DNA of 44,852 bases. It comes from Octopus bimaculoides. Lineage: Eukaryota. Position 1 is the stretch's first letter. Each line of letters starts with the position of its first letter. Position numbers and translations under genes: made by a program. Of this stretch, positions 10,200 through 44,852 are shown in pieces. The stretch is from contig NC_068999.1 of the NCBI RefSeq assembly GCF_001194135.2, positions 30,607,155-30,652,006 of the forward strand. Reading direction: 5' to 3'. The notes below the pieces were generated by a model, which was given only the letters and a program-made list of their open reading frames with translations, ran no database searches and was not told the origin of the DNA.

Positions 10200-10516
10200 G
10201 CAACTTTGCTTGTTGCAAGATCTGCAGCTGAATGTTGCTTATTTTTATATCTATATTGCAAACAGAGATAAACGACTGCCATGTCTAGCAGAAAGGTGTC
10301 CAGGACTGAGGAAGGGTAAGACCCTGAAACCAGTTCTGGTCTAATGGTCCTGTCACTGCTGGATGGGAGGGGTTCACTCCCTTGCTTGCAATATATTGGT
10401 CACAGGTTTTGTGTCATTAACCAGCTGGAGGAAATGTCCTCCTGGGGTTAAAAAAGAGTAGTAACATTGTTCTGTATGGAACAGCCATATTGAAATGGCC
10501 ACAAACATTACTTTTA
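10198..10516 (+). mobile_element. Second, circularly permuted copy of the retrozyme-like unit
   Basis: 10198-10337 matches the reverse complement of 9859-9983; 10342-10516 matches the reverse complement of 10025-10199. Confidence 0.8.
10300..10347 (+). ncRNA. Type I hammerhead ribozyme motif with intact catalytic core
   Basis: CCAGGA (stem I) CTGAGGA (core) AGGG-TAAGA-CCCT (stem II) GAAA CCA-GTTC-TGG TC (stem III, GUC triplet, cleavage after 10341) TAATGG (stem I'). Stem I has two central mismatches here, but the sister copy supplies CCAGTA and TACTGG, a perfect 6-bp stem. Confidence 0.8.
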
Positions 10517-12664
10517 TATATAGAAACACAAGAAATGCCTGCAGTTCCTTTGGCAGCTGTGGATGCTTTTCCAAAAGATCTAGACAAAGAGCATCATCCC
10601 ATCATGCTGGAAGAAGGCAGAAGGATGTTTTGTGCCAAAAAAAGAAAACTTCACAGTTGTTAATCAGTTTAGGACCATCTCCCCACTGAGTGTTGAGGGG
10701 AAAATCTTCTTTTCCATACTGGCCAAAAGGATGACCTCTTACATGACTAAGAATGAGTATATAAACACATCTGTTTGGAAAGGTGGGGTCCTGGGTTTCT
10801 CAGAATGTCTGAAACACATTGAAATTCTCAGCCAGTTGATTCAGGAAATCAAGAGAAGAAAAGTGACTTGATAGTGATTTAGCTGGATCTGGAAAATGCA
10901 TACAGATCAATTCCTCATGTCCTCATGTATGTAGCCCTTCACTCCTATCATATTCCCCAGCATATTAAGGGAATAATTAGCAGTTACTTTGGAATCATAA
11001 CTGGTTGCACAATTTCCCCATTCTTTTCGTCAAGGGTAAGAATCTTCTCAACTGCTGATAGAGAAGCCCAAGGACCAACAATGGAATCAGGCAGCTGTCA
11101 GCAATCAATAAAGGGCTTTGTGGATTATATTACAGTAACAACTACAACTCATGTGGATGCAGAAAGGGTGCTGACTTCAATTGAACACATAGCAGCATGG
11201 GTAAGAATGAAGTTTAGCCCCCAAAATCGAGGTGCCTGGTGATTGGGGAGGTGGGTGGATGGGACAAAGTAACCAACAAGATCAGGCAGCAAATGCAAGG
11301 AGAGGCCTTTCCATCAATAGAGGAAAATCCAATTAAATGCCTTGGAAAGATGTTTGACAAGTTGCTCTCAGACAGATGCAATGTTACTAGTATTGTGAAG
11401 CAAGCAGAGGAATGGCTAAGGGGAATAGACAGGGCTTCCAGTAATGTAAAAGGCATGGCTCTATGAACACGGACTGCTTCGAAGACTCATATAGTTATTG
11501 ATACTGTATGATATTCTGATGACGATGGTGGAAAGGGTGGAGAGGAAGGTAAATGAATACCTCCGAAGATGGTTAGATGTTCCCTCAAGCTTCACTTCAA
11601 TAGGTCTGTACATAAAATCAGGACAACTACAATTTCCCTTGTCAGTTGTAGTGAAAGAATTTAAAGTAACAAAATGTAATGCAATGATGTACAGAAATTT
11701 GAAGGACAAACTTGTTGGACATGCAGGTATTACAACAAGGTCTGGGTGAAAGTGAGTTGCTAGCACAGCAGTCGCTCAGGCTGAAGGCATGCTGCAGTTA
11801 CGTGACATTATTGGAGTTACATGCAGGAGTCACCAGGATCTCAGTTCTTCCTATTTCCAACATTGGAAGAAAGCAGACATCGGGAAGAGGAGGGCTATGA
11901 CCCAGGAAGTGGTGCAGTACCAGGAGGAAGAAGAAGAAAATCAAGAGCTGTGGAGCTGGTATCTCAGGATGCATGGACTAAATGGGACCTCCCTAAGAGG
12001 AAGCTCACATGGACTGACCCGAAGAGTCTGGAACCTTTCACGCTTCCTTCCTGCTGTGAGTGGTATATGACACTCCTGACGTGAACAAACCTGTACAGAT
12101 GGGGTTTGAGGGAAGACCAGCTGTATAGACTTTGTGGAGAAAGGGGCACTCTGGCACACATCTTGGCAGGGTGAAGAATAGCACTTTCTCATGGCAGATA
12201 TAAATGGCACCATGATAGGGTGCTTGCAACACTTACACCCTGGAACATGAAAGGTACACGAAACATCATCACCAGGGGAAGGCAACAACAGGAATTAAAA
12301 GTTCGTGAAAGAGGGAGATAGACCAGTAAAGTCGGCAAAAACAATACATAGCTTGCTGCATGGATCTCAACCATAGGATATGAAAGTGGACCTAGTGGAG
12401 AGATTGCCATTTCTCCAGGTCGTCCATACAACCCTGAGGCCAGATGTGGTCTTTTGGTCTAAAAAGGTCAAGAAAATTATCATAATTGAACTCATAGTCC
12501 CGTGGGAAGAGGGGTGTGATGAGGCCCATGAATGGAAACATGCCAGATATGAGAGACTTCTGCAGGATTGCAGGGAGAAGAGAGGGCAGGTATGGCTCTT
12601 CCTGGTTGAAGTTGACTACAAGGGATTCCATGCTCAGTCAGTATTGAGGATGCTTACAGCCATT
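10517..12664 (+). mobile_element. HERO-like RLE-clade non-LTR retrotransposon; 5'- and 3'-truncated, frameshifted RT, CCHC and restriction-like endonuclease
   Basis: KKC..LWQLW..KI*TKSIIPSCWKKAEGCFVPK, QFRTISPLSVEGKIFFSILAKR, LDLENAYRSIPH, GCTISP, KGFVDYIT (FMDD site), LCGERGTLAHILAG..HHDRVL (decayed CCHC), LRPDVVFWSK..IIIIELIVPWEEGCDEAHEWKHARY (PD..E RLE motif typical of HERO). Confidence 0.88.
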
Positions 12665-12721
12665 GACTAAAGGCAGTGCTCCTGCATGGCCGCAGTCAAA
12701 TGACTGAAACAAGTAAAAGAG
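12665..12721 (+). mobile_element. 3' tail of SINE family A
   Basis: GACTAAAGGCAGTGCTCCTGCATGGCCGCAGTCAAATGACTGAAACAAGTAAAAGAG matches the tails of the full copies. Confidence 0.9.
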
Positions 12722-13908
12722 AAAAAGAGGTATTAAATTGTTGGATCAGGTGATGAATGTTATGGAGAGAGTCATAGCCCAACTAATTAGGGAGAGAGTT
12801 AGTCTATATGAGATGCAGTTTGGTTTTGTGCCAGGGAGAAGCACCACTGATGCTATATTTCTGGTAAAGTAGCTGCAGGAGAGATACATAGTCAAGGATA
12901 AACCTCTGTACTTGGCTTTTTTTGACTTGGAGAAAGCCTTTGACAGGGTCCCCCTGATTCCTTACCTAGTGGTCAATGTAGAAAATTGGGATAGATGAGT
13001 GGTTGGTTAGAGCTGTACAGTAATGCTACCAGTAAGTTGAGGGTTGGCAATAAGTACAGCAAAGGATTCAGGGTGCAAGTATGGGTTCAACAAGAATTGG
13101 TCCTCAGCCCCATCTTGTTCATCATAGTCCTCCAGGCAATAACAGAGGAATTTAAGACAGGCTGCTCCTGGGAGCTCGTCTATGCTGATGACCTTACTCT
13201 TATAGCTGAATCACTACCAGAACTAGAGAAGAAGTTCCAGGTATAGAAGCTAAGTCTTGAATCAAAGGGCCTTAGAGTTAACTTAGCAAAAACCAAAGTC
13301 TTAGTAAGTAGGAAGGCAGACAAATCACAAATCTCTTCAGGTAGATGACTCTGCTTGATTTGTAGGAAAGGTGTAGGTAGAAACTCCATAAGATGTACCC
13401 ATTGTAAGCTTTGGACACGTAAAATGAGCAGTAATATCAGAGGAAGGTTAACAAGGAAAATAGCTTTTGTATGTGAAAGATGCACAGGTACAATAACCAC
13501 CAAAAATGTAAAGAAAATAGACTCCATCAACTGCCAGGTAGAGGTAGTTGATAGCTTCCATTGGGTGACCAAGTTAGTAGTGGAGGTGGATGCTCTGAAA
13601 GTATAGCTGTGAGAATAAGAATAGGCTGGGCAAGGTTCAGAGAGTGCCTACCTCTGCTGGCAACAAGGCCTCTCCCTCAGAGTGAAAGGCAGACTGTATG
13701 ATGCCTGTGTGCAAACAGCTATGCTACATGGCAGTGAAACATGGGCTGTAATAGCTGAGGACATGTGTAGGCTTGAAAGAAATGAAGCCAGTATGCTTCA
13801 CTGGATGTGCAATGTCAGTGTGCATGTTTGACAAACAGTAAGCGTCTTCAGAGTAAAGTTAGGTATAAGAGGCATCAAATGTGGTGTGCAAGAGAGACGG
13901 CTGCAATG

Positions 13909-15189: not shown

Positions 15190-15405
15190 GTGTCAGAGAC
15201 GTGTAAAAAGCACATGTGCTGGTGACATGTAAAAAGCACCTAGTACACTCTGTAAAGTGGTTGACATTAGGAAAGGCATCCAGCTATAGAAACCAAACCG
15301 AAACAGACAACTGGAGCCTGGCGTAACTCTCTGGTTTACCAGTTCCAGTCAAACCATCTAACCCATACCCACATGGAAAACGGATGCTAAATGATGATGA
15401 TGATG
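15190..15405 (+). mobile_element. RTE LINE 3' end fragment
   Basis: GTAAAAAGCACC..AGGAAAGGCATCCAGCTATAGAAAC..CAGTCAAACCATCTAACCCAT..ATGGAAAACGGATGCTAAATGATGATG. Confidence 0.85.
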
Positions 15406-16061
15406 TGTTAATTTCAAAACACATCTTTTAATTATCTGTGAAAATTCACCTAGAAGGATGAAAAGAATGTTAAACCTTCATACACCTATCAGTTATTTGC
15501 AATGACTTTAGCAATGGTGCACCAGCCTGCTGGTCAATTGCACTATAGTCAGAAATACAAGTTTTGCATCCTGTATGTCATTTCTTTCGACCAAAATATA
15601 GACAAATATAAACACTTAATGGATAAGAAGATAAAATGAAAGACATAACTTATATAACATGGTTTATGTAGGATAAATTGTTTCATTCTTTATTCCACAT
15701 ACTCATGCATTTTCTCCTACAAAACTATTTAAAAATATCTTGTAATAAGGGAAACATACTAAATTTGTTTTGTTCCACAAAATGTACTGGTAAATTAATA
15801 GCAGCATAATGTAAAATAGGAGCATGATACCATATATACATCAGCATATATGGTATCAGATACATACAATAAAACCTCTATCTTGCCTTACTCAAAGTTT
15901 GTTTAAAAAGTCTATGGAAATAAATATAGAGAGCACACAAACAAAACAGTGATGCAACAATGTTTACTAAATTACTTTAGTAGCTCCGAGCCTCTTACTG
16001 AACATTGCACCATGTAAAACTGACCTACATAAACACTTCTATTTAATGTAATAATAGTTTC

Positions 16062-16846: not shown

Positions 16847-17418
16847 GAGGCAAGTGAAATCGAAACCGAACTAAATTCGACAACTGGCACCCATGCCAAC
16901 ATCGTCTCCTTCATTGGACATGAAACTCAGCTTGCAAAGACTTATTGGGGCAAGCGAAAGCAAAATCAGGATGGCACCTGTGCCCAGCGTCGCCTTCCTG
17001 GCACTTGTGCCCATGGTATACGTAAGGACTTTCGAGTGAGATCGTTGCCAGTGCCCCTGGACTGGCTCTTGTGTGGGTGGCACATAAAATACACCATTTT
17101 GAGCGTGGCCGTTGCCAGTATCGCCTGACTGACCTTCATGCCAGTGACACGTAAAAGCACCCACTACATTCTCTGAGTGGTTGGCGTTAGGAAGGGCATC
17201 CAGCTGTAGAAACTGTGCCAAATCAGATTGGAGCCTGGTGTAGCCTTCAGGTTCCACCAGTCCTCAGTCAAATCGTCCAANNNNNNNNNNAGAAACTGTG
17301 CCAAATCAGATTGGAGCCTGGTGTAGCCTTCAGGTTCCACCAGTCCTCAGTCAAATCGTCCAACCCATGCTAGCATGGAAAGCGGACGTTAAACGATGAT
17401 GATGATGATGATGATGAT
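16847..17418 (+). mobile_element. RTE LINE 3'UTR copy (young, CpG-rich), spanning an assembly gap
   Basis: Ends TGGCGTTAGGAAGGGCATCCAGCTGTAGAAAC..CCATGCTAGCATGGAAAGCGGACGTTAAACGATGAT(GAT)n; N10 at 17281-17290. Confidence 0.88.
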
Positions 17419-17503: not shown

Positions 17504-17546
<43 letters not shown>

Positions 17547-17556
17547 NNNNNNNNNN

Positions 17557-17871
17557 TCCATCGGTCTCTTTTGCCAAACCGCTAAGTTACGGGGACATAA
17601 ACACACCAACATCGGTTGTCAAGCGATGTTGGGGGGGACAAACACAGACACACAAACACATACACACAAACACATACACACATACATATATAAATATACA
17701 TATATACGACGGGCTTCTTTCAGTTTCCGTCTACCAAATCCACTCACAAGGCTTTGGTCGGCCCGAGGCTATAGTAGAAGACACTTGCCCAAGGCGCCAC
17801 GCAGTGGGACTGAACCCGGGACCCTGTGGTTGGTAAGCAAGCTACTTACCACACAGCCACTCCTGCGCCTG
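17557..17871 (-). mobile_element. tRNA-derived SINE (family A), least decayed copy; 3' part lost in the N gap
   Basis: A-box at 17848-17859 (TGGCTGTGTGGT) and B-box at 17806-17816 (GGTTCAGTCCC) on the minus strand; retains CpGs. Confidence 0.92.
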
Positions 17872-21989: not shown

Positions 21990-24900
21990 TGAACTGGAGA
22001 ATTGCTGCAATTAGTCGTCATACTACTTATGTCTCTTCCGGAACACAACACAGTGGTGAACTCATCTCCAGTCAAAATGGCATTCCAGGTAGTGATTACA
22101 TTGAAGATTCCACCATTCTGGATGCATGGTCCAGTATTGTGGTTTTATCATTGAGCTGCAGTTGTCTTCGAACCAGATTGTTAGTGATGTGCTCACCTAA
22201 TGCACATGGTCAGAATTATGAATGTGGTCCAAGATCTCATTTTGGCACCACCTGGTTCTGTGTCATATAACACATTCAAAACTACTCTCATTTTCACCAG
22301 CTCCTTATATTGGAGGAATTAGGAGACAGAAAACCATCCCAGCTTCTATGGAGAATGAAGCAGCTTCTGCGAGAACAGAATTTCCTAGAAGAAATCTTTA
22401 AGCAGCTTTTTTCTCCAGCATCACACTGGTGGTCTGGGCTTCCACCAGAGAATCCATTTCACTTGAGGAACTGGCTGAGCTTGCAGACAAAATCGCAGAG
22501 GTACCACATAAATATTCTTCCTTATCTACTGTGACTCTAGTCATTCCTTCTACCAATCCTTTCCTTTCATCATCCAGTGCTTTGGAAATTTCAGACACAA
22601 CAGGCATCACAAATACAGGCCCTGACAGTGTAAATACAGGCTCAATCATTTGGTATTCCCCATCAAAGTAGCAGCTGACCATGTCAATTTGGTAGACAGT
22701 CATGAAGCCCAAGTGCCTCCTGTTATTCACAAGAAACATATTGGTATCACCATGCATTTGGAACACAGGCACAGAAATGCATACCTCCATGTTCATTCTC
22801 AATTTTCTGTTCAGGAAATGAAACAGCCAGGAATTGAACACGACGGAAGTTCCTGCCTCTCACCCACAAAGTCACTTGTTTTTCATCCATGACCGTGCCA
22901 CAGGCACATGTTTCCTTCTTGATACCAGTGTGGAAGTCAGCATTATCCCTATCTCCAACACTAATTGCAGCAGAAAAGAAACATCGATCTGGCTTCAGGC
23001 AATCAACCAATCACCAATTTCAACTTGCAGTGAACAGCCCCTAACACTGGACTTAGGACTTCATCGAACCTTCCAGTGGGTATTTATTGTAGCTAAGCTG
23101 CTGACCCCTATTTTAGGAGTTGATTTTCTACATCATTTTGGTCTCCTAGTGGGTATCATGCATGGAAGACTTGTTGACAGCACCACTCAGCTCACTGTGC
23201 AGCATAGCTGCTTGGATGGTTGCAGTCAGCCCAATCATTTTACAGTCAACAGCAACCTGTCACAGTGCTATCCTCAAAGAATACCCTGACATCGCTTGAC
23301 CTGTATTCCACAATAAACCCATTAAACACGAAGTCACCCACCATATCAAGACCTGTGGTCCACCTGTTGCTGCACGACCCTGAAGGCTACCACCAGATCG
23401 TCTCAAGGCCATCAAAAGAGAATTCCAACACATGCTCGACATTGTGCGAGCTTATAATCAAATCCCCATAGAACCTGCTGATATTCTGAAGACTGCAGTC
23501 ATGACACCCTTTGAAATGTTCGAATTCCCACGTGTACCTTTTGGTTTATGCAATGCAGCACAGAAATTTCTACATTTTATCAATACGGTTACCAGAGGTT
23601 TGCCTTTCATCTATGTATACATACATGACTTGTGGCCAGTTGCTCAAACGAAGAACATGAACAACACCTGCACCTGCTATTCCAACGCTTGTGGGAATAT
23701 GGTATTGTCATCAACTCCAGCAAGTGCATCCCTTCATTTTCTCAGACACATCATAGATAAGATAAAGATGGCATTCACCCACCTTTGGACAAAGTTTAAG
23801 CCATTGTAAATTTTCCACCACCTACATCTCTTTGTAAACTGCAGGAATTTCTTGGCTTGGTGAACTTCTATTGAAGATTCATACCTTACTGTGCAGAGAC
23901 AGGCCAACCACTCACAGATTTGCTGTGACAGCCAACAATCAAAAATGTAAACATTGCATTGAAAAAAAGAACATGCCTCTTTCGCTGAATTGAAAGAAGT
24001 GTTATCCAAGACTACCATGTTGGTGTATCCCAAACCAGATACCCCACTGAGTGTACTGGTTGGTTGATGCATCTGATTCTGGAGATGGAGGCATGCTTCA
24101 AGAACTCACTGTGTCTTTTTTCTCTAAGAGCTTAAAACCTGCCGAGACTAAGTACAGTACTTTCGGGTGAGAATTATCGGCAGTATGTCTTGCCATCAGG
24201 AATTATCGATACTTGCTGGAAGGTCATGCTTTCTCAATCTATACTGACCAAAAACCATTGGTTTATGTATTCAGCGCCAAGCCCGATCATCATTCACCCA
24301 GGGAAGTCTGACATCTAAACTTTATATTTCAATACACGACTGACATTTACTACATTAAAGGTGCGAACAACTCTTCAGCTGATGCTCTATCATGCATGGA
24401 GCTTAATGCAATCCACACCAATGCTACTATTGGGCTGCAGCAGATTGCAGCTGATCAACAAGATGATGAAGAACTACTAAAGCTCCGGGATTTGTCATCT
24501 CTGAAATTTCAGCAATTCCTGTTACCTTCTGCTACAGGCTATATTTAGTTCGACACCTCCACCGACTATGAACGTCCATACGTGTTGCAGAAACATTGGG
24601 ATGTTTTCTCTGCATTACATTCCCTAGCACATCCTGATGCCCGCACCACACAGAAGCTGATAATGACCCATTATGTGTGAACCAACATAAACAAGGACAC
24701 CTATGAATGGGCTAGAAGCTGTGTCATGTGCCAAAAAGCAAAGATTCACTGACACATTAAATTTCCTATTGGGTCCTTTGCAACTCCTGATGCATGTTTC
24801 CAACATGTGTACATTGATATCTTTGGACCCTTACCTCCTTCTAACAACAACTCATCTGCTCCCCTATGTCGACAGATTTTCTCGCTGGCCAGAGGCTTTT

Positions 24901-25700
24901 CCACTATCAGATACTTCCACAGAAACTGTCACCAAAATGCTAGTGTTTCACTGGGTTTTGCATTTTGGCACAGCCATGATGATCACCACTGACAGAGGAT
25001 GCCAGTTTGATTCCTACCTCTTCACTGAGCTGACTCGTCTCCTCAGATGTAAGCACACCTGCACAATAGCATATCACCCCGCAGCAAATGGCATGGTCAA
25101 ACGCTTTCACCGCCAGCTTAAGGTAGCTATTAAAGCCTATCCAGACTGCTCCAACTGGTTGGAATATCTTCCACTCATCCTCCTTGGTATTCGATCCACT
25201 GTTAAGGAGGGAGTTGGACATACTCTGGCTGAACTTGTTTATGGAATGGTACTGACTTTACCCAGTCAAATGCTCATACCTGTTTCTCTATAGCATCTTC
25301 CTGATCCTTCAAAATACATCAGTCATTTGCGAACATCTATGTCTCATCTTTCACCTACAAGTCTTTGACAGCAGAATGTCGCTACAGGACATCAATAAAT
25401 GGAAATATGTTTTTGTTTGGAATGATGGTATTCCTCAGCAACTTCATCCACCTTATTCTGGACCCTACCAAGTAATTGGCAGGAAACCAAACTATTTCAT
25501 TCTGGATATAAATGGGAAATGAAATACTGTTGGCATCAATCATTTGAAAAAAAGAGATTTGTCGAACCAGATTTACCACCAGTTACCACCATTTCCCAAA
25601 TGGACTCAACAACACCAGCTTCGCCCAGCACAAACAACTTGAATTCTGCACAACCCTGGCACACCAAGTCAGGTAGAATAGTTTGATGGCCTGCAAGATA
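21990..25700 (+). pseudogene. Decayed gag-pol polyprotein of the Gypsy element
   Basis: gag VQDLILAPP..YNTFK and EELGDRKPSQLL; protease FLLDTSVEVSIIP; [25 protein letters not shown]; RNase H DASD; zinc finger HSLAHP..CVMCQ; integrase IDIFGPLP..VDRFSRWPEA..TTDRGCQF..YHPAANGMVKRFHR; GPY module PYSGPYQV; many stops and frameshifts. Confidence 0.92.
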
Positions 25701-27169: not shown

Positions 27170-27450
27170 GCCACTACCCACTGACTAGCTCCTGTGCTGA
27201 TGGCACATAAAACGCAATATCCAAACATGATCGATGCCAGGATTGCCTGACTGGCCTCCGTGCTGGTGGCATGTAAAAAGCACCCACTTCACTTTCGGAG
27301 TGGTTGGCATTAGGAAGGGCATCCATCTGTAGAAATAATGCCAGATCAGATAGGAGCCTGGTGCAGCTGCTGGCTGTCTAGACCCCAGTCAAACCATCCA
27401 ACCCATGCCAGCATGGAAAACGGACGTTAAATGATGATGATGATGATGAT
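27170..27450 (+). mobile_element. RTE LINE 3' end fragment
   Basis: GTAAAAAGCACCCAC..TTAGGAAGGGCATCC..CCATGCCAGCATGGAAAACGGACGTTAAAT(GAT)n. Confidence 0.88.
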
Positions 27451-31277: not shown

Positions 31278-32122
31278 CAGGGTGCGATGAGTAAATTGTT
31301 GCCACTTTATAGTTTTAATTTTGCACATATGCATTGATTTTGTCAACTACACAGTGTAGTAGAGTCAGTTGGGGACCATCTATGAGAAAAACAGCACCAT
31401 GACACAATTCACTCTGTCAGAAATTAAGAAATGATATGCTGTACTGCTTGGCATTCATGCTGAAAGCTCCAGTATGAACATTTCAGAATGTTTGGGTGTC
31501 AATCTGAGGACATTTACCAAAAGTGATAAAAATCAAACATCCAGTCAACATCATGGTGTTTGGAGTGATCACTAGTGATGGCAACATTATATTTCCATTC
31601 TTCTTCCCACACAGCCCCAAACTCAACATGGAGGCCTACATCAAGTGTCTGGAGGAGGTAGTGCTGCCCTGGGTCAAGAGGGTGGCTGCTGGAAAACCCT
31701 ACGTCTGGCAACAGGACTCTGCACCATGCCATGCAAGCAAGAGGACCCAGTCATGGCTGTCAGACAATTTCTGCGACCACACCACCCCTAATATCTGGCC
31801 ACCTAACTCCTCAGATTGCAACTCCTTGATTATTATGTGTGGGGTGCAGTTGAGTGAGAGATCAGCAAAAACTCCTTGTAACACCAAAGATGAAGTGAAG
31901 GCAAGGATTATGGTAGCATTCATCAACTTAAACAAGGAGACTGTCCAGAAGAGTTACAGGAGATTCTGAAGTCATTTGGAGGCCATGGCTGAAGCCAATG
32001 GCAATTTTATTGAATAAATTTCAGGATATTTTTATGTGATTTTGGTAAATACATCTGTTAACATGAGATGTCAGTGTTGTTTTCATTTTTGATTAATTTA
32101 GACGACAGTTTATTCACCTTAT
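31278..32122 (+). mobile_element. Internally deleted DD37D (maT/Bmmar1-like) Tc1/mariner element
   Basis: TA|CAGGGTG left TIR; ORF ..KHPVNIMVFGVITSDG..YVWQQDSAPCH..WPPNSSDCNSL(D)YYVWG with 37 residues between the last two Asp after correcting a 1-bp deletion; N-terminus deleted; right TIR degenerate near 32100-32122. Confidence 0.8.
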
Positions 32123-37170: not shown

Positions 37171-37584
37171 TTTTACTCTTTTACTTGTTTCAGTCATTTG
37201 ACTGTGGCCATGCTGGAGCACTGCCTTTAGTCAAGCAAATTGACCCCAGGACTTATTCTTTGGAAACCTAGTACTTATTCTATCAGTCTCTTTTGCTGAA
37301 CCGCTAAGTTACAGGGACGTAAACACACCAGCATCGGTTGTCAAGCGATGTTGGGGGGGGGGAACACAGACACACAAACATATACACATACATACATACA
37401 TACACATATATACATATATATGACGGGCTTCTTTCAGTTTCCGTCTACCAAATCCACTCACAATGCTTTGGTCAGCTCAAGGCTATAGTAGAAGACACTT
37501 GCCCAAGGTGCTATGCAGTGGGACTGAACCTGAAAGTATGTGGTTGGTAAGCAAGCTACTTACAACATAGCCACTCTTACTCCT
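37171..37584 (-). mobile_element. tRNA-derived SINE (family A), full length
   Basis: Same head, body, internal (TA/TG) tract and ACTGAAACAAGTAAAAGAGTAAAA tail as the other copies. Confidence 0.92.
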
Positions 37585-44739: not shown

Positions 44740-44852
44740 TCATCATCATCATCATCATCATCGTTTAACGTCCGCTTTCCATGCTAGCATGGGTTGGACG
44801 ATTTGACTGAGGACTGGTGAAACCGGATGGCAACACCAGGCTCCAGTCTGAT
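44740..44852 (-). mobile_element. RTE LINE 3' end, running off the window edge
   Basis: (CAT)n CGTTTAACGTCCGCTTTCCATGCTAGCATGGGTTGGACGATTTGACTGAGGACTGG, nearly identical to the reverse complement of 17340-17418. Confidence 0.92.

What the first reader, a model, noticed from the sequence alone, without database searches (positions are those of the whole stretch)
10300..10347. Type I hammerhead ribozyme in a non-coding repeat: candidate cephalopod retrozyme
Seen: all core nucleotides are present (CUGAGGA, GAAA, GUC), with a 4-bp stem II and a 3-bp-plus-A-U stem III with a GUUC loop. Combining the two copies reconstructs a perfect CCAGTA/TACTGG stem I. The host unit has no credible ORF. The plus-strand copy reads continuously across the cleavage site (about unit positions 217-344, then 1-175), as expected from a circular or multimeric template. 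Inference: an ancestral self-cleaving, possibly circRNA-producing element. The main alternative is a Penelope pseudo-LTR. I cannot tell whether the family is already described.
Basis: partly seen in the sequence, partly recalled or inferred. Interest (0 to 1): 0.88.

Follow-up and report, generated by a model that had tools for sequence, protein, structure and literature searches.

The report
Decayed hammerhead-ribozyme retroelement in an octopod genome
The motif is a real type I hammerhead ribozyme inside a ~345-nt non-coding repeat of an octopus-like genome, and it looks like a worn-out copy of the already known animal "retrozyme" class rather than a new kind of element.

Summary
Window 10300-10347(+) carries a complete type I hammerhead: CCAGGA/CUGAGGA/AGGGU-AAG-ACCCU/GAAA/CCA-GUUC-UGG/UC|UAAUGG. 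It is the only such motif in the window. A covariance model built only from four published, experimentally cleaving retrozyme hammerheads ranks it first (20.1 bits, E~1e-3). Rfam gives no hit, but that is uninformative: a textbook hammerhead in a control locus also fails the Rfam threshold.

The motif sits in a ~345-nt, 41.5% GC, ORF-less unit that is predicted to be strongly self-paired. Four copies were found, and each either starts at the predicted cleavage site or reads through it.
- The minus copy (10200->9859) begins at the scissile bond and ends 3-4 nt before it.
- The plus copy and a Logan contig (L006) are head-to-tail permuted across the site.

The minus copy's core, UUGAGAA, is not simply broken. 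It is the documented U3-A8 covariant of the C3-G8 pair.

No Penelope ORF is attached. The neighbour is a 5'-truncated R2-like LINE.

Best reading: decayed copies of an octopod non-LTR retrozyme-like element, a new member of a known kind. Cleavage, circRNA formation, tandem arrays and copy number are untested. The present plus copy probably misfolds.

The parts
10300..10347 (+). Type I hammerhead motif of the plus copy. It has the canonical C3-G8 core (CUGAGGA...GAAA...UC), and the predicted cleavage lies between 10341 and 10342. Helix I has two mismatches.
   Evidence: Sequence; only descriptor hit in the window; top hit of model R1, 20.1 bits, E~1e-3.
10198..10515 (+). Plus copy of the repeat unit: unit positions 218-344 followed by 1-175, continuous across the cleavage site. 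It carries a 13-nt insertion at 10280-10292 relative to the minus copy.
   Evidence: BLAST and alignments.
9859..10200 (-). Minus copy, a near-exact monomer (unit 1-342). Its 5' end (10200, C|UACUGG) lies at the predicted scissile bond, and its 3' end stops 3-4 nt short of it.
   Evidence: The junction with the plus copy shares 3 nt (10198-10200, TAG/CTA).
9859..9896 (-). Hammerhead portion of the minus copy: CCAGUA-UUGAGAA-AGGGU-AAG-ACCCU-GAAA-CCAGUUCU, with the U3-A8 core variant.
   Evidence: Sequence. U3-A8 is documented as a natural covariant of C3-G8 (PMC4209133). The descriptor accepts this motif once GGT is restored and the copy is circularised.
10194..10200 (-). C17 plus UACUGG: the helix I 3' strand of the minus copy. 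It pairs perfectly (6/6) with CCAGUA at 9896-9891 if the unit is circular or tandem.
   Evidence: Sequence.
3647..3814 (+). Third, more diverged partial copy (unit ~2-176). It starts within about 10 nt of the cleavage site, ends at the same unit position as the plus copy, and is followed by (AT)n.
   Evidence: BLAST, MAFFT, nhmmer profile positions 2-176, E 1.9e-41.
9797..9858 (.). Left flank: (AC)25 microsatellite (9797-9847) plus a 12-nt non-unit spacer next to the minus copy's 3' end.
   Evidence: TRF; sequence.
10516..10526 (.). AT-rich 11-nt junction (ATATATATAGA) between the end of the plus copy and the 5'-truncated LINE.
   Evidence: Sequence; tblastn start of LINE homology at 10527.
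10527..12724 (+). Context, not part of the unit: a degenerate R2-superfamily-like non-LTR retrotransposon. It is 5'-truncated at about residue 129 of ~900 and lies on the same strand as the plus copy.
   Evidence: RVT_1 hit; homologues up to E 2.9e-162, one of them named R2 by its source; tblastn coordinates.

Best explanation
These are decayed genomic copies of a hammerhead-bearing, non-coding, non-autonomous retroelement of an octopod. It is a non-LTR retrozyme-like element with a unit of about 345 nt.

**Inferred life cycle**
- Head-to-tail copies are transcribed.
- The type I hammerhead cuts after C17 and releases unit-length RNA with a 5'-OH at UACUGG.
- The monomer can be ligated into a highly self-paired circle.
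- Linear monomers, circles or multimers are reverse-transcribed by a reverse transcriptase supplied in trans. A Penelope-like element is most likely by analogy with other animals; a LINE is possible.
- The cDNA is inserted at microsatellites, often as inverted or partially tandem structures.

**Shown here**
- The motif, its statistical support and its homologue in a second locus.
- The permuted copy structure.
- Copy ends at the predicted scissile bond.
- The C3-G8/U3-A8 difference between copies.
- Unit composition and predicted self-pairing.

**Inferred only**
- Catalysis, circularisation, and the identity of the mobilising enzyme.

The two copies at the finding are probably inactive today. 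The plus copy has a broken helix I and a strong competing hairpin. The minus copy is an isolated monomer that lacks GGU of helix III.
For: 1. **Motif.** The core is complete and all three helices are present at 10300-10347. It is the only hit in the window, with 0.017-0.15 expected by chance. Model R1, built only from four validated retrozyme hammerheads of coral, mussel and axolotl, ranks it first at 20.1 bits, E~1e-3.
2. **Homologue elsewhere.** Logan contig L006 carries the same unit at 72-75% identity. Its hammerhead core is intact (CUGAGGA...GAAA...UC|UACUGG at 467-514). The 38-nt hammerhead stretch is 84-92% identical between copies, against 58-70% for the rest of the unit counting gaps.
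3. **Copy ends and junctions.** The minus copy starts at the scissile bond (within 3 nt of junction microhomology) and ends 3-4 nt before it. The third copy starts within about 10 nt of it. The plus copy (218-344 + 1-175) and L006 (167-344 + 1-234) read head-to-tail through it. This requires tandem or circular templates.
4. **Core covariation.** The copies differ at four positions in the 48-nt motif, and two of these convert C3-G8 into U3-A8. That is a natural covariant reported in about 1,300 Schistosoma motifs. The probability under random substitution is 0.0018 for this pair and 0.04 for any compensatory double change among 16 pairs.
5. **Unit properties match published retrozymes.** The unit is 342-346 nt and 41.5% GC. 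Its circular MFE is -108.8 against -84.8 +/- 5.4 for shuffles (z = -4.4), with 65% of bases paired. It has no ORF or Pfam hit. The published description is in PMC7229834.
6. **Insertion architecture.** An inverted copy abuts a partial tandem, next to (AC)n and (TA)n. This matches what is described for Penelope-type integration (PMC8557442).
7. **Tolerated variants.** G7 (CUGAGGA) and a non-G-C 10.1/11.1 pair both occur in axolotl retrozyme hammerheads that cleave in vitro.
Against: - No Rfam hammerhead hit at any threshold. This is weakened by the control, where a canonical hammerhead in L002 scores only 20.4 bits, below the gathering score of 34, and is found only in a 141-nt slice.
- 10.1-11.1 is A-U in all three copies, whereas G-C is described as highly conserved.
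- The hammerhead fold is not the predicted MFE. The cause is that CCAG/CUGG occurs in both helix I and helix III.
- No array of two or more full units was seen. Only three loci were found in about 110 kb of octopod-like DNA, and none in 20 kb of O. bimaculoides.
- All DNA pattern scans of public collections were empty. Those collections are not expected to hold cephalopod DNA.
- The covariation rests on two sequences, and both changes are transitions.
- Cleavage, circRNA formation and expression are untested.
Confidence: 0.7

Rival explanations
1. The unit is the pseudo-LTR, or a solo remnant, of an autonomous Penelope-like element rather than a separate retrozyme family. The hammerhead would be the PLE's own ribozyme, and the inverted and partial-tandem structure would be a truncated PLE insertion.
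For: Inverted 5'-truncated copies, partial tandems and a microsatellite target bias are hallmarks of PLE insertions (PMC8557442). PLE pLTRs carry type I hammerheads. Xenopus retrozymes are sister to PLE pLTRs. Cephalopods do harbour PLEs.
Against: No RT or GIY-YIG frame lies next to the unit. This holds for window 6.6-17.3 kb apart from two LINE RTs and for the L006 flanks. The hammerhead is of the canonical, retrozyme-like kind: helix I 6 bp, helix II 5 bp, and a stable helix III. It is not the minimal PLE kind, which has a 1-bp helix III, a 7-8 bp helix II and an extra nucleotide after A9. Only three loci were examined, so an association elsewhere cannot be excluded.
Confidence: 0.15
2. The composite 9848-12724 is one insertion made by the neighbouring R2-like LINE. 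Its reverse transcriptase left the LINE RNA at codon ~129 and switched template onto a circular or multimeric retrozyme RNA, producing the plus copy. A second cDNA, primed from the other nicked strand on a self-cleaved linear monomer, produced the minus copy. The family would then be LINE-mobilised rather than PLE-mobilised.
For: The plus copy lies on the same strand as the LINE and ends 11 nt upstream of its 5' truncation point. The minus copy is a run-off-length monomer joined head-to-head through 3 nt of microhomology. PMC7229834 leaves LINEs open as possible mobilisers. That R2-type RTs switch templates readily is from my own knowledge, not tested here.
Against: The region is TE-dense and AT-microsatellite-rich, so the adjacency may be coincidence. 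No target-site duplication could be defined. The LINE's 3' side is disrupted by a second LINE at about 12717. The other two loci have no adjacent LINE.
Confidence: 0.1
3. The hammerhead-like motif is a chance resemblance inside an ordinary dispersed repeat, for example a SINE-like element, and the permuted copies come from local rearrangement.
For: There is no Rfam hit. The motif has A10.1-U11.1 and a competing hairpin more stable than the hammerhead fold. A descriptor hit at 0.017 per window would occur by chance many times in a gigabase genome. Two copies end at unit position 175 next to (TA)n, like a conventional 3' end.
Against: The core is conserved in a third, 72-75% diverged copy from another contig. 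Copy boundaries coincide with the predicted scissile bond. The only core differences between copies are the compensatory U3-A8 pair. Model R1 gives E~1e-3. No tRNA-like structure was detected.
Confidence: 0.05

Closest known systems
Metazoan non-LTR retrozymes (Cervera & de la Pena 2020, PMC7229834), e.g. Mytilus galloprovincialis Mg353 and Acropora millepora Amil224
   Same: Both have a type I hammerhead with a 6-bp helix I, a 4-5 bp helix II and a short palindromic helix III. Both have a unit of 170-400 nt (here ~345), GC below 45% (here 41.5%), no ORF, a predicted highly self-paired circle, and head-to-tail junctions through the cleavage site.
   Different: There is no sequence similarity outside the catalytic core. 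10.1-11.1 is A-U instead of G-C. Helix III is more stable (3 bp plus A-U with a tetraloop). No long tandem array was seen, and circRNA and cleavage are untested. Cephalopods do not appear in the papers searched.
Penelope-like element pLTR hammerheads (Cervera & de la Pena 2014, PMC4209133; Craig et al. 2021, PMC8557442)
   Same: Both are type I hammerheads. The U3-A8 core covariant is documented in this class. The insertion architecture also matches: inverted and partial-tandem copies with a microsatellite target bias.
   Different: PLE motifs are minimal: helix III of about 1 bp, helix II of 7-8 bp and an extra nucleotide after A9. They also flank an RT/GIY-YIG ORF. Neither feature is seen here.
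Amphibian satellite 2 / axolotl retrozymes Rtz331 and Rtz353
   Same: The unit is about 330-350 nt. The axolotl Ax330 construct (called Rtz_331/Rtz331 in the paper's text) has the CUGAGGA core with G7. Rtz353 has a non-G-C base of helix II (U.U) yet still cleaves, 22% in 1 h.
   Different: The amphibian helix III is 1-2 bp and these ribozymes work best as dimers. The octopod helix III should support monomeric folding. The host lineage is unrelated.
Schistosoma Sm-alpha SINE-like hammerhead elements (recalled from memory; a lead, not a test)
   Same: A dispersed non-coding element of about 330 nt with a type I hammerhead whose helix I begins CCAG/CUGG.
   Different: Sm-alpha is described as pol III/SINE-like. 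No tRNA-like part was found here. No direct sequence comparison was possible.

Membership tests
Hammerhead ribozyme, type I | Conserved core C3U4G5A6N7G8A9 ... G12A13A14 ... A15.1/U16.1-H17 | tested here: met
   Plus copy: CUGAGGA, GAAA, U-C. L006: the same. Minus copy: UUGAGAA, the documented U3-A8 covariant.
Hammerhead ribozyme, type I | Three helices around the core, with helix I open and helices II and III closed by loops | tested here: met
   Helix II is 5 bp and helix III is 4 bp. Helix I has 4/6 pairs in the plus copy, 6/6 in the circularised minus copy, and 5/6 in L006.
Hammerhead ribozyme, type I | G10.1-C11.1 pair at the base of helix II (typical and highly conserved) | tested here: not met
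   A-U in all three copies. A validated axolotl ribozyme has U.U at this position and still cleaves, so the feature is typical rather than obligatory.
Hammerhead ribozyme, type I | Match to Rfam RF00163 at the gathering score | tested here: inconclusive
   No hit, even at E<=10 in a 101-nt slice. A canonical control hammerhead (L002:13593-13640) also fails, at 20.4 against 34 bits.
Hammerhead ribozyme, type I | Match to a model built from experimentally active metazoan retrozyme hammerheads | tested here: met
   R1 gives 20.1 bits, E~1e-3, the top hit of the window. The same model scores the control at 39.7 bits.
Hammerhead ribozyme, type I | Site-specific self-cleavage; loop 1/loop 2 tertiary contacts | not testable with these tools
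   Indirect evidence only: copy 5' ends lie at the predicted bond. The thermodynamic prediction favours a competing hairpin.
Metazoan non-LTR retrozyme | Unit of ~170-400 nt, GC below 45%, no ORF, no LTR/PBS/PPT | tested here: met
   342-346 nt and 41.5% GC. No ORF or Pfam hit.
Metazoan non-LTR retrozyme | Head-to-tail tandem repeats (dimers to large multimers) | tested here: inconclusive
   Head-to-tail junctions were found in 2 copies: 0.9 unit in the plus copy and 1.15 units in L006. No array with two complete units was seen.
Metazoan non-LTR retrozyme | Highly self-paired circular RNA | tested here: met
   Prediction only: circular MFE z = -4.4, 65% paired. The existence of the circRNA itself was not tested.
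Metazoan non-LTR retrozyme | Expressed as linear and circular RNA; many genomic copies | not testable with these tools
   No cephalopod genome or transcriptome could be searched by DNA. Only L006 was reachable, through a spurious protein call.
Penelope-like element pLTR | Direct repeats flanking an RT + GIY-YIG ORF | tested here: not met
   No such frames in window 6.6-17.3 kb or in L006. The neighbouring RT is R2-like.
Penelope-like element pLTR | Minimal hammerhead: ~1-bp helix III, 7-8 bp helix II, extra nucleotide between A9 and 10.1 | tested here: not met
   Helix III is 4 bp, helix II is 5 bp, and there is no extra nucleotide.
tRNA-derived SINE | tRNA-like 5' module with A and B boxes | tested here: not met
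   ARAGORN finds nothing in the window. By eye there is only a weak B-box-like GGGTTCACTCCC hairpin.

The most novel reading that the evidence does not exclude
An octopod retrozyme family maintains two functional catalytic-core versions side by side, C3-G8 and U3-A8. Its genomic copies preserve the 5' end made by self-cleavage, which would be a fossil record of in vivo ribozyme activity. It is mobilised by template switching of an R2-like LINE reverse transcriptase rather than by a Penelope-like element.
Probability: 0.1. Interest if true: 0.6.

Novelty: new member of a known kind. Interest (0 to 1): 0.4.

Why it matters
Animal retrozymes are a recently defined class of ribozyme-bearing retroelements that make abundant small circular RNAs. 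Who mobilises them is still debated. Cephalopods are absent from the surveys I could read, so an octopod family would extend the class to a lineage known for unusual RNA biology and repeat-rich genomes. This locus also offers two natural experiments: a C3-G8/U3-A8 pair within one family, and a unit-length copy that starts at the scissile bond. Both can be tested cheaply. It does not change the concept, because the element fits the published description almost feature for feature.

Tried and rejected
- **Rfam gathering and E-value scans** gave no hammerhead. I first read this as evidence against the motif. I then found that Rfam also misses a canonical hammerhead, so the result carries little weight.
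- **Exact-pattern scans** of viral, metagenome and prokaryote-genome collections, using the hammerhead and the conserved hairpin, all returned nothing. These collections do not hold cephalopod DNA.
- **Protein-word search** with the antisense open frame of the unit found nothing.
- **Searches with the neighbouring LINE and a mariner ORF** were meant to harvest same-species DNA. Only one O. bimaculoides locus came back (L001, no copy of the unit). The loci from ENA assembly ERZ21867824 (L002, L003) share no SINEs with the window.
- **P0184/P0185** from the representative search looked like a tandem array of the unit. They are an unrelated 101-bp satellite without a hammerhead.
- **ARAGORN search for a tRNA-like SINE head** found none.
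- **Search for Penelope RT/GIY-YIG frames** around the unit found none.
- **Hammerhead remnant upstream of the third copy** (3578-3646): only a doubtful UCCGGAUC resemblance, not pursued.
- **A pol III terminator (TTTT at unit 172-175)** as the explanation for the shared 3' end: rejected as a full explanation, because a T5 run at unit ~262 would stop pol III before the hammerhead.

Full report
**1. What is in the sequence**

Window 10300-10347(+) reads CCAGGA CUGAGGA AGGGU-AAG-ACCCU GAA A-CCA-GUUC-UGG-U C | UAAUGG. This is the full type I hammerhead layout.
- Helix I is open.
- The core runs C3 to A9 (with G7), then G12-A13-A14, the A15.1-U16.1 pair and C17.
- The scissile bond lies between 10341 and 10342.
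- Helix II has 5 bp if the A10.1-U11.1 pair is counted.
- Helix III has 3 bp plus A-U, closed by GUUC.
- Helix I forms only 4 of 6 pairs in this copy.

A descriptor scan of both strands finds this motif and nothing else. First-order Markov shuffles of the window give 0.15 hits per window with a relaxed descriptor, and 0.017 with helices II and III of at least 4 bp.

**2. An independent statistical test**

I took the four retrozyme hammerheads whose self-cleavage was measured by Cervera & de la Pena: coral Amil224, mussel Mg353, and axolotl Ax353 and Ax330. The sequences and marked cleavage sites come from the paper's supplement. I aligned them and built covariance model R1.

Searched with filters off, R1's best hit in the window is exactly 10300-10347(+), at 20.1 bits and E about 1e-3. 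The calibration is rough. The runner-up scores 12.8 bits and is a local-end artefact.

**3. Why Rfam is silent**

Rfam gives no hammerhead hit at the gathering threshold, at E<=10 over 1.7 kb, or at E<=10 over 101 nt. This initially counted against the motif.

By chance, a fetched control locus from ENA assembly ERZ21867824 contains a textbook type I hammerhead at L002:13593-13640 (CUGAUGAGUUC-UGAUA-GAACGAAACAGAUCUGUC). R1 scores it at 39.7 bits, E 1.6e-9. Rfam missed this motif in a 22-kb E-value scan. In a 141-nt slice it scored only 20.4 bits against RF00163's gathering score of 34.

The printed Rfam consensus is close to the Schistosoma sequence. The Rfam negative therefore says little about a diverged metazoan hammerhead.

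**4. The host repeat**

BLAST, repeat finding and alignments define a unit of about 345 nt.
- **Minus copy (10200->9859).** It covers unit positions 1-342. In its own orientation it begins C|UACUGGUCC, which is at the predicted scissile bond. The junction is uncertain by 3 nt, because 10198-10200 (TAG/CTA) are shared with the adjoining plus copy. It ends ...GAAACCAGUUCU, 3-4 nt short of the bond, followed by 12 nt and (GT)25.
- **Plus copy (10198-10515).** It covers unit 218-344 followed without interruption by 1-175, so it reads through the cleavage site.
- **Third copy (3647-3814).** This more diverged copy matches profile positions 2-176. It begins within about 10 nt of the site; the alignment there is weak. 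It ends at the same unit position as the plus copy. Both ends are followed by (TA)n-like sequence.

**5. A further locus from outside the window**

A search of the protein-representative library with an open frame of the unit returned P0183. This is a spurious 190-aa gene call that reads TGA as W. It lies on Logan contig L006 from run SRR11869391.

L006 316-710 corresponds to unit 167-344 followed by 1-234, which is 1.15 units head-to-tail through the cleavage site. It is 72-75% identical to the window copies.

Its hammerhead at 467-514 reads CCAGGA CUGAGGA AGGCU-AAG-ACUCU GAAA CCAGUUCUCA UC|UACUGG. The core is intact, but helices II and III are partly decayed.

L006 1-56 is a short repeat present six times in the window, so the contig comes from the same or a related species.

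Across the three copies, the first 38 nt of the hammerhead are 84-92% identical, against 58-70% for the rest of the unit with gaps counted. A few other segments are similarly conserved.

**6. The core difference between copies**

C3 and G8 pair in the active fold. Cervera & de la Pena 2014 report U3-A8 as a natural covariant, recovering about 1,300 such motifs in Schistosoma.

The circularised minus motif and the plus motif differ at four positions: 2.2, 3, 8 and 1.3. Two of these four are this compensatory pair. With four random substitutions in 48 nt, the chance of exactly this exchange is 0.0018. The chance of any compensatory double change among the 16 pairs is 0.04.

This is suggestive rather than conclusive. 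It rests on two sequences, and both changes are transitions.

The minus copy also has a perfect 6-bp helix I of its own, CCAGUA at 9896-9891 with UACUGG at 10199-10194. The plus copy and L006 share CCAGGA.

**7. Properties of the unit**

- GC content is 41.5%.
- The unmodified minus unit, folded as a circle, gives -108.8 kcal/mol against -84.8 +/- 5.4 for dinucleotide shuffles (z = -4.4), with 65% of bases paired.
- A linear repaired version gives z = -3.6.
- Open frames are short and have no Pfam hit or homologue.

Published metazoan retrozymes have ~170-400 nt units, GC below 45%, type I hammerheads, no coding capacity and highly self-paired circRNAs. This unit matches those features.

**8. 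Caveats on catalysis**

- The 10.1-11.1 pair is A-U in all copies, whereas G-C is called highly conserved. Against that, the axolotl Rtz353 ribozyme has U.U at this position and still cleaves, 22% in 1 h. The same supplement shows CUGAGGA (G7) in Ax330.
- CCAG/CUGG occurs in both helix I and helix III, so a hairpin pairing CCAGNACUG with CCAGUUCUGG competes with the hammerhead fold. The hammerhead fold is -12.9 against an MFE of -15.9 kcal/mol for the repaired chimera. It is -6.7 against -19.9 for the actual plus copy.

I conclude that the plus copy as it stands is probably inactive. The minus copy is an isolated monomer lacking GGU. The inference of activity therefore concerns the family's source copies, not these two.

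**9. Surroundings**

- From 10527 a degenerate non-LTR retrotransposon runs on the + strand to about 12724.
- It has an RVT_1 domain.
- Its homologues are in fish, amphioxus and bivalves, with E down to 2.9e-162. One is named R2 by its source.
- It is 5'-truncated at about residue 129 of ~900.
- From the sequence I read a C-terminal restriction-like endonuclease motif (RPDVV...IIELIVPWE). This is my own reading and was not tested.
- A second LINE RT follows at 12717-13830.
- No Penelope-type RT or GIY-YIG frame was found between 6.6 and 17.3 kb or in L006.

**10. Host organism**

- The window's mariner-like ORF has an O. bimaculoides relative.
- The corresponding DNA is 82% identical.
- Several SINE-like repeats of the window recur in the O. 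bimaculoides locus L001 at 75-89% identity.

The host is therefore an octopod. The species is not identified.

**11. How it most likely works**

The copy structures point to circular or multimeric RNA templates processed by the hammerhead. One copy is bounded by the cleavage site, one starts near it, and two run head-to-tail across it. The published retrozyme cycle fits these structures.

The head-to-head pair next to (AC)n and (TA)n resembles the inverted and partial-tandem insertions and microsatellite bias described for Penelope-type integration. A 2026 preprint argues that animal retrozymes are PLE derivatives. I therefore favour a PLE as the mobiliser, by analogy only.

The alternative is that the abutting R2-like LINE made the whole composite by template switching and twin priming. 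This is compatible with the strand and junction geometry, but it rests on a single locus.

**12. Novelty**

No paper in the searchable library links hammerheads or retrozymes to cephalopods. The latest survey sampled vertebrates, three insects and one coral. The class itself is well described.

This is a new member of a known kind. It is of moderate interest mainly for the within-family C3-G8/U3-A8 pair and for the copy that begins at the scissile bond.

Noticed in passing
L002:13342-13645 (ENA ERZ21867824 contig ctg120461l): A ~300-nt element flanked on both sides by (TA)n carries a near-perfect canonical type I hammerhead at its 3' end (13593-13640). R1 scores it at 39.7 bits and Rfam RF00163 at only 20.4 bits. 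A degenerate second motif lies at L002:132-173(-). The organism is unknown, and the locus shares no SINEs with the window.
   Followed up: partly
window 10515 and 3811-3814: Two independent copies of the unit end at the same unit position (~175, ...CATTACTTTT / ...CTTCACTTT) and are followed by (TA)n. The minus copy and L006 read straight through that position. This suggests a preferred priming or termination point that I could not explain.
   Followed up: partly
window 10300-10340: CCAGGACUG (helix I 5' strand plus C3-G5) can pair with CCAGUUCUGG (helix III) to form a 9-bp hairpin that encloses helix II. This hairpin is 13 kcal/mol more stable than the hammerhead fold in the plus copy. It could be a decay product or a regulatory alternative fold.
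   Followed up: partly
window 10527-12724 (+) and 12717-13830 (+): Two degenerate non-LTR retrotransposons lie in tandem orientation. The first is R2-superfamily-like, with closest relatives in fish, amphioxus and bivalves rather than annotated cephalopod proteins. The second is a different LINE carrying a YADD RT motif.
   Followed up: partly
window 22834-25290 (+); 31523-31966 (+): Fragments of an LTR retroelement are present: weak RVP and RVT_1 hits and an rve integrase at E 7e-10. There is also a mariner/Tc1-like DDE_3 transposase remnant, 82% nt identical to a copy in O. bimaculoides.
   Followed up: partly
window 27391-27445, 7655-7709, 17353-17407, 44750-44804, 15351-15408, 5918-5978; also 212-355, 6282-6426, 37172-37322: Short SINE-like repeats occur many times in the window. 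They are shared with L006 (positions 1-56) and with O. bimaculoides L001 (11250-11400). This is the basis for calling the host an octopod.
   Followed up: no
L006:209-781: The public protein P0183 is a spurious gene call that reads through the non-coding retrozyme copy by translating TGA as W. It was nevertheless the only route to a further copy of the family.
   Followed up: yes
L007:1-14781 (ENA ERZ25878582): A 101-bp satellite with 146 copies is translated into open frames of 580-1052 aa in the public protein collection. It is unrelated to the unit and has no hammerhead.
   Followed up: yes
window 7941-8169; about 17545-17565: A 42-nt tandem repeat (5.5 copies, 93% matches) lies 1.7 kb upstream of the finding. 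The window also contains a run of 20 N, an assembly gap, inside a (TA)n tract.
   Followed up: no
window 10095-10125 (-), 10421-10447 (+), 3709-3735 (+): The hairpin CCAGCUGGAGGA-GAUG-UCCUCCUGGGG is the best-conserved stretch of the unit. It is near-identical in the three window copies, including the diverged third one, and is partly decayed in L006. Its function is unknown.
   Followed up: no
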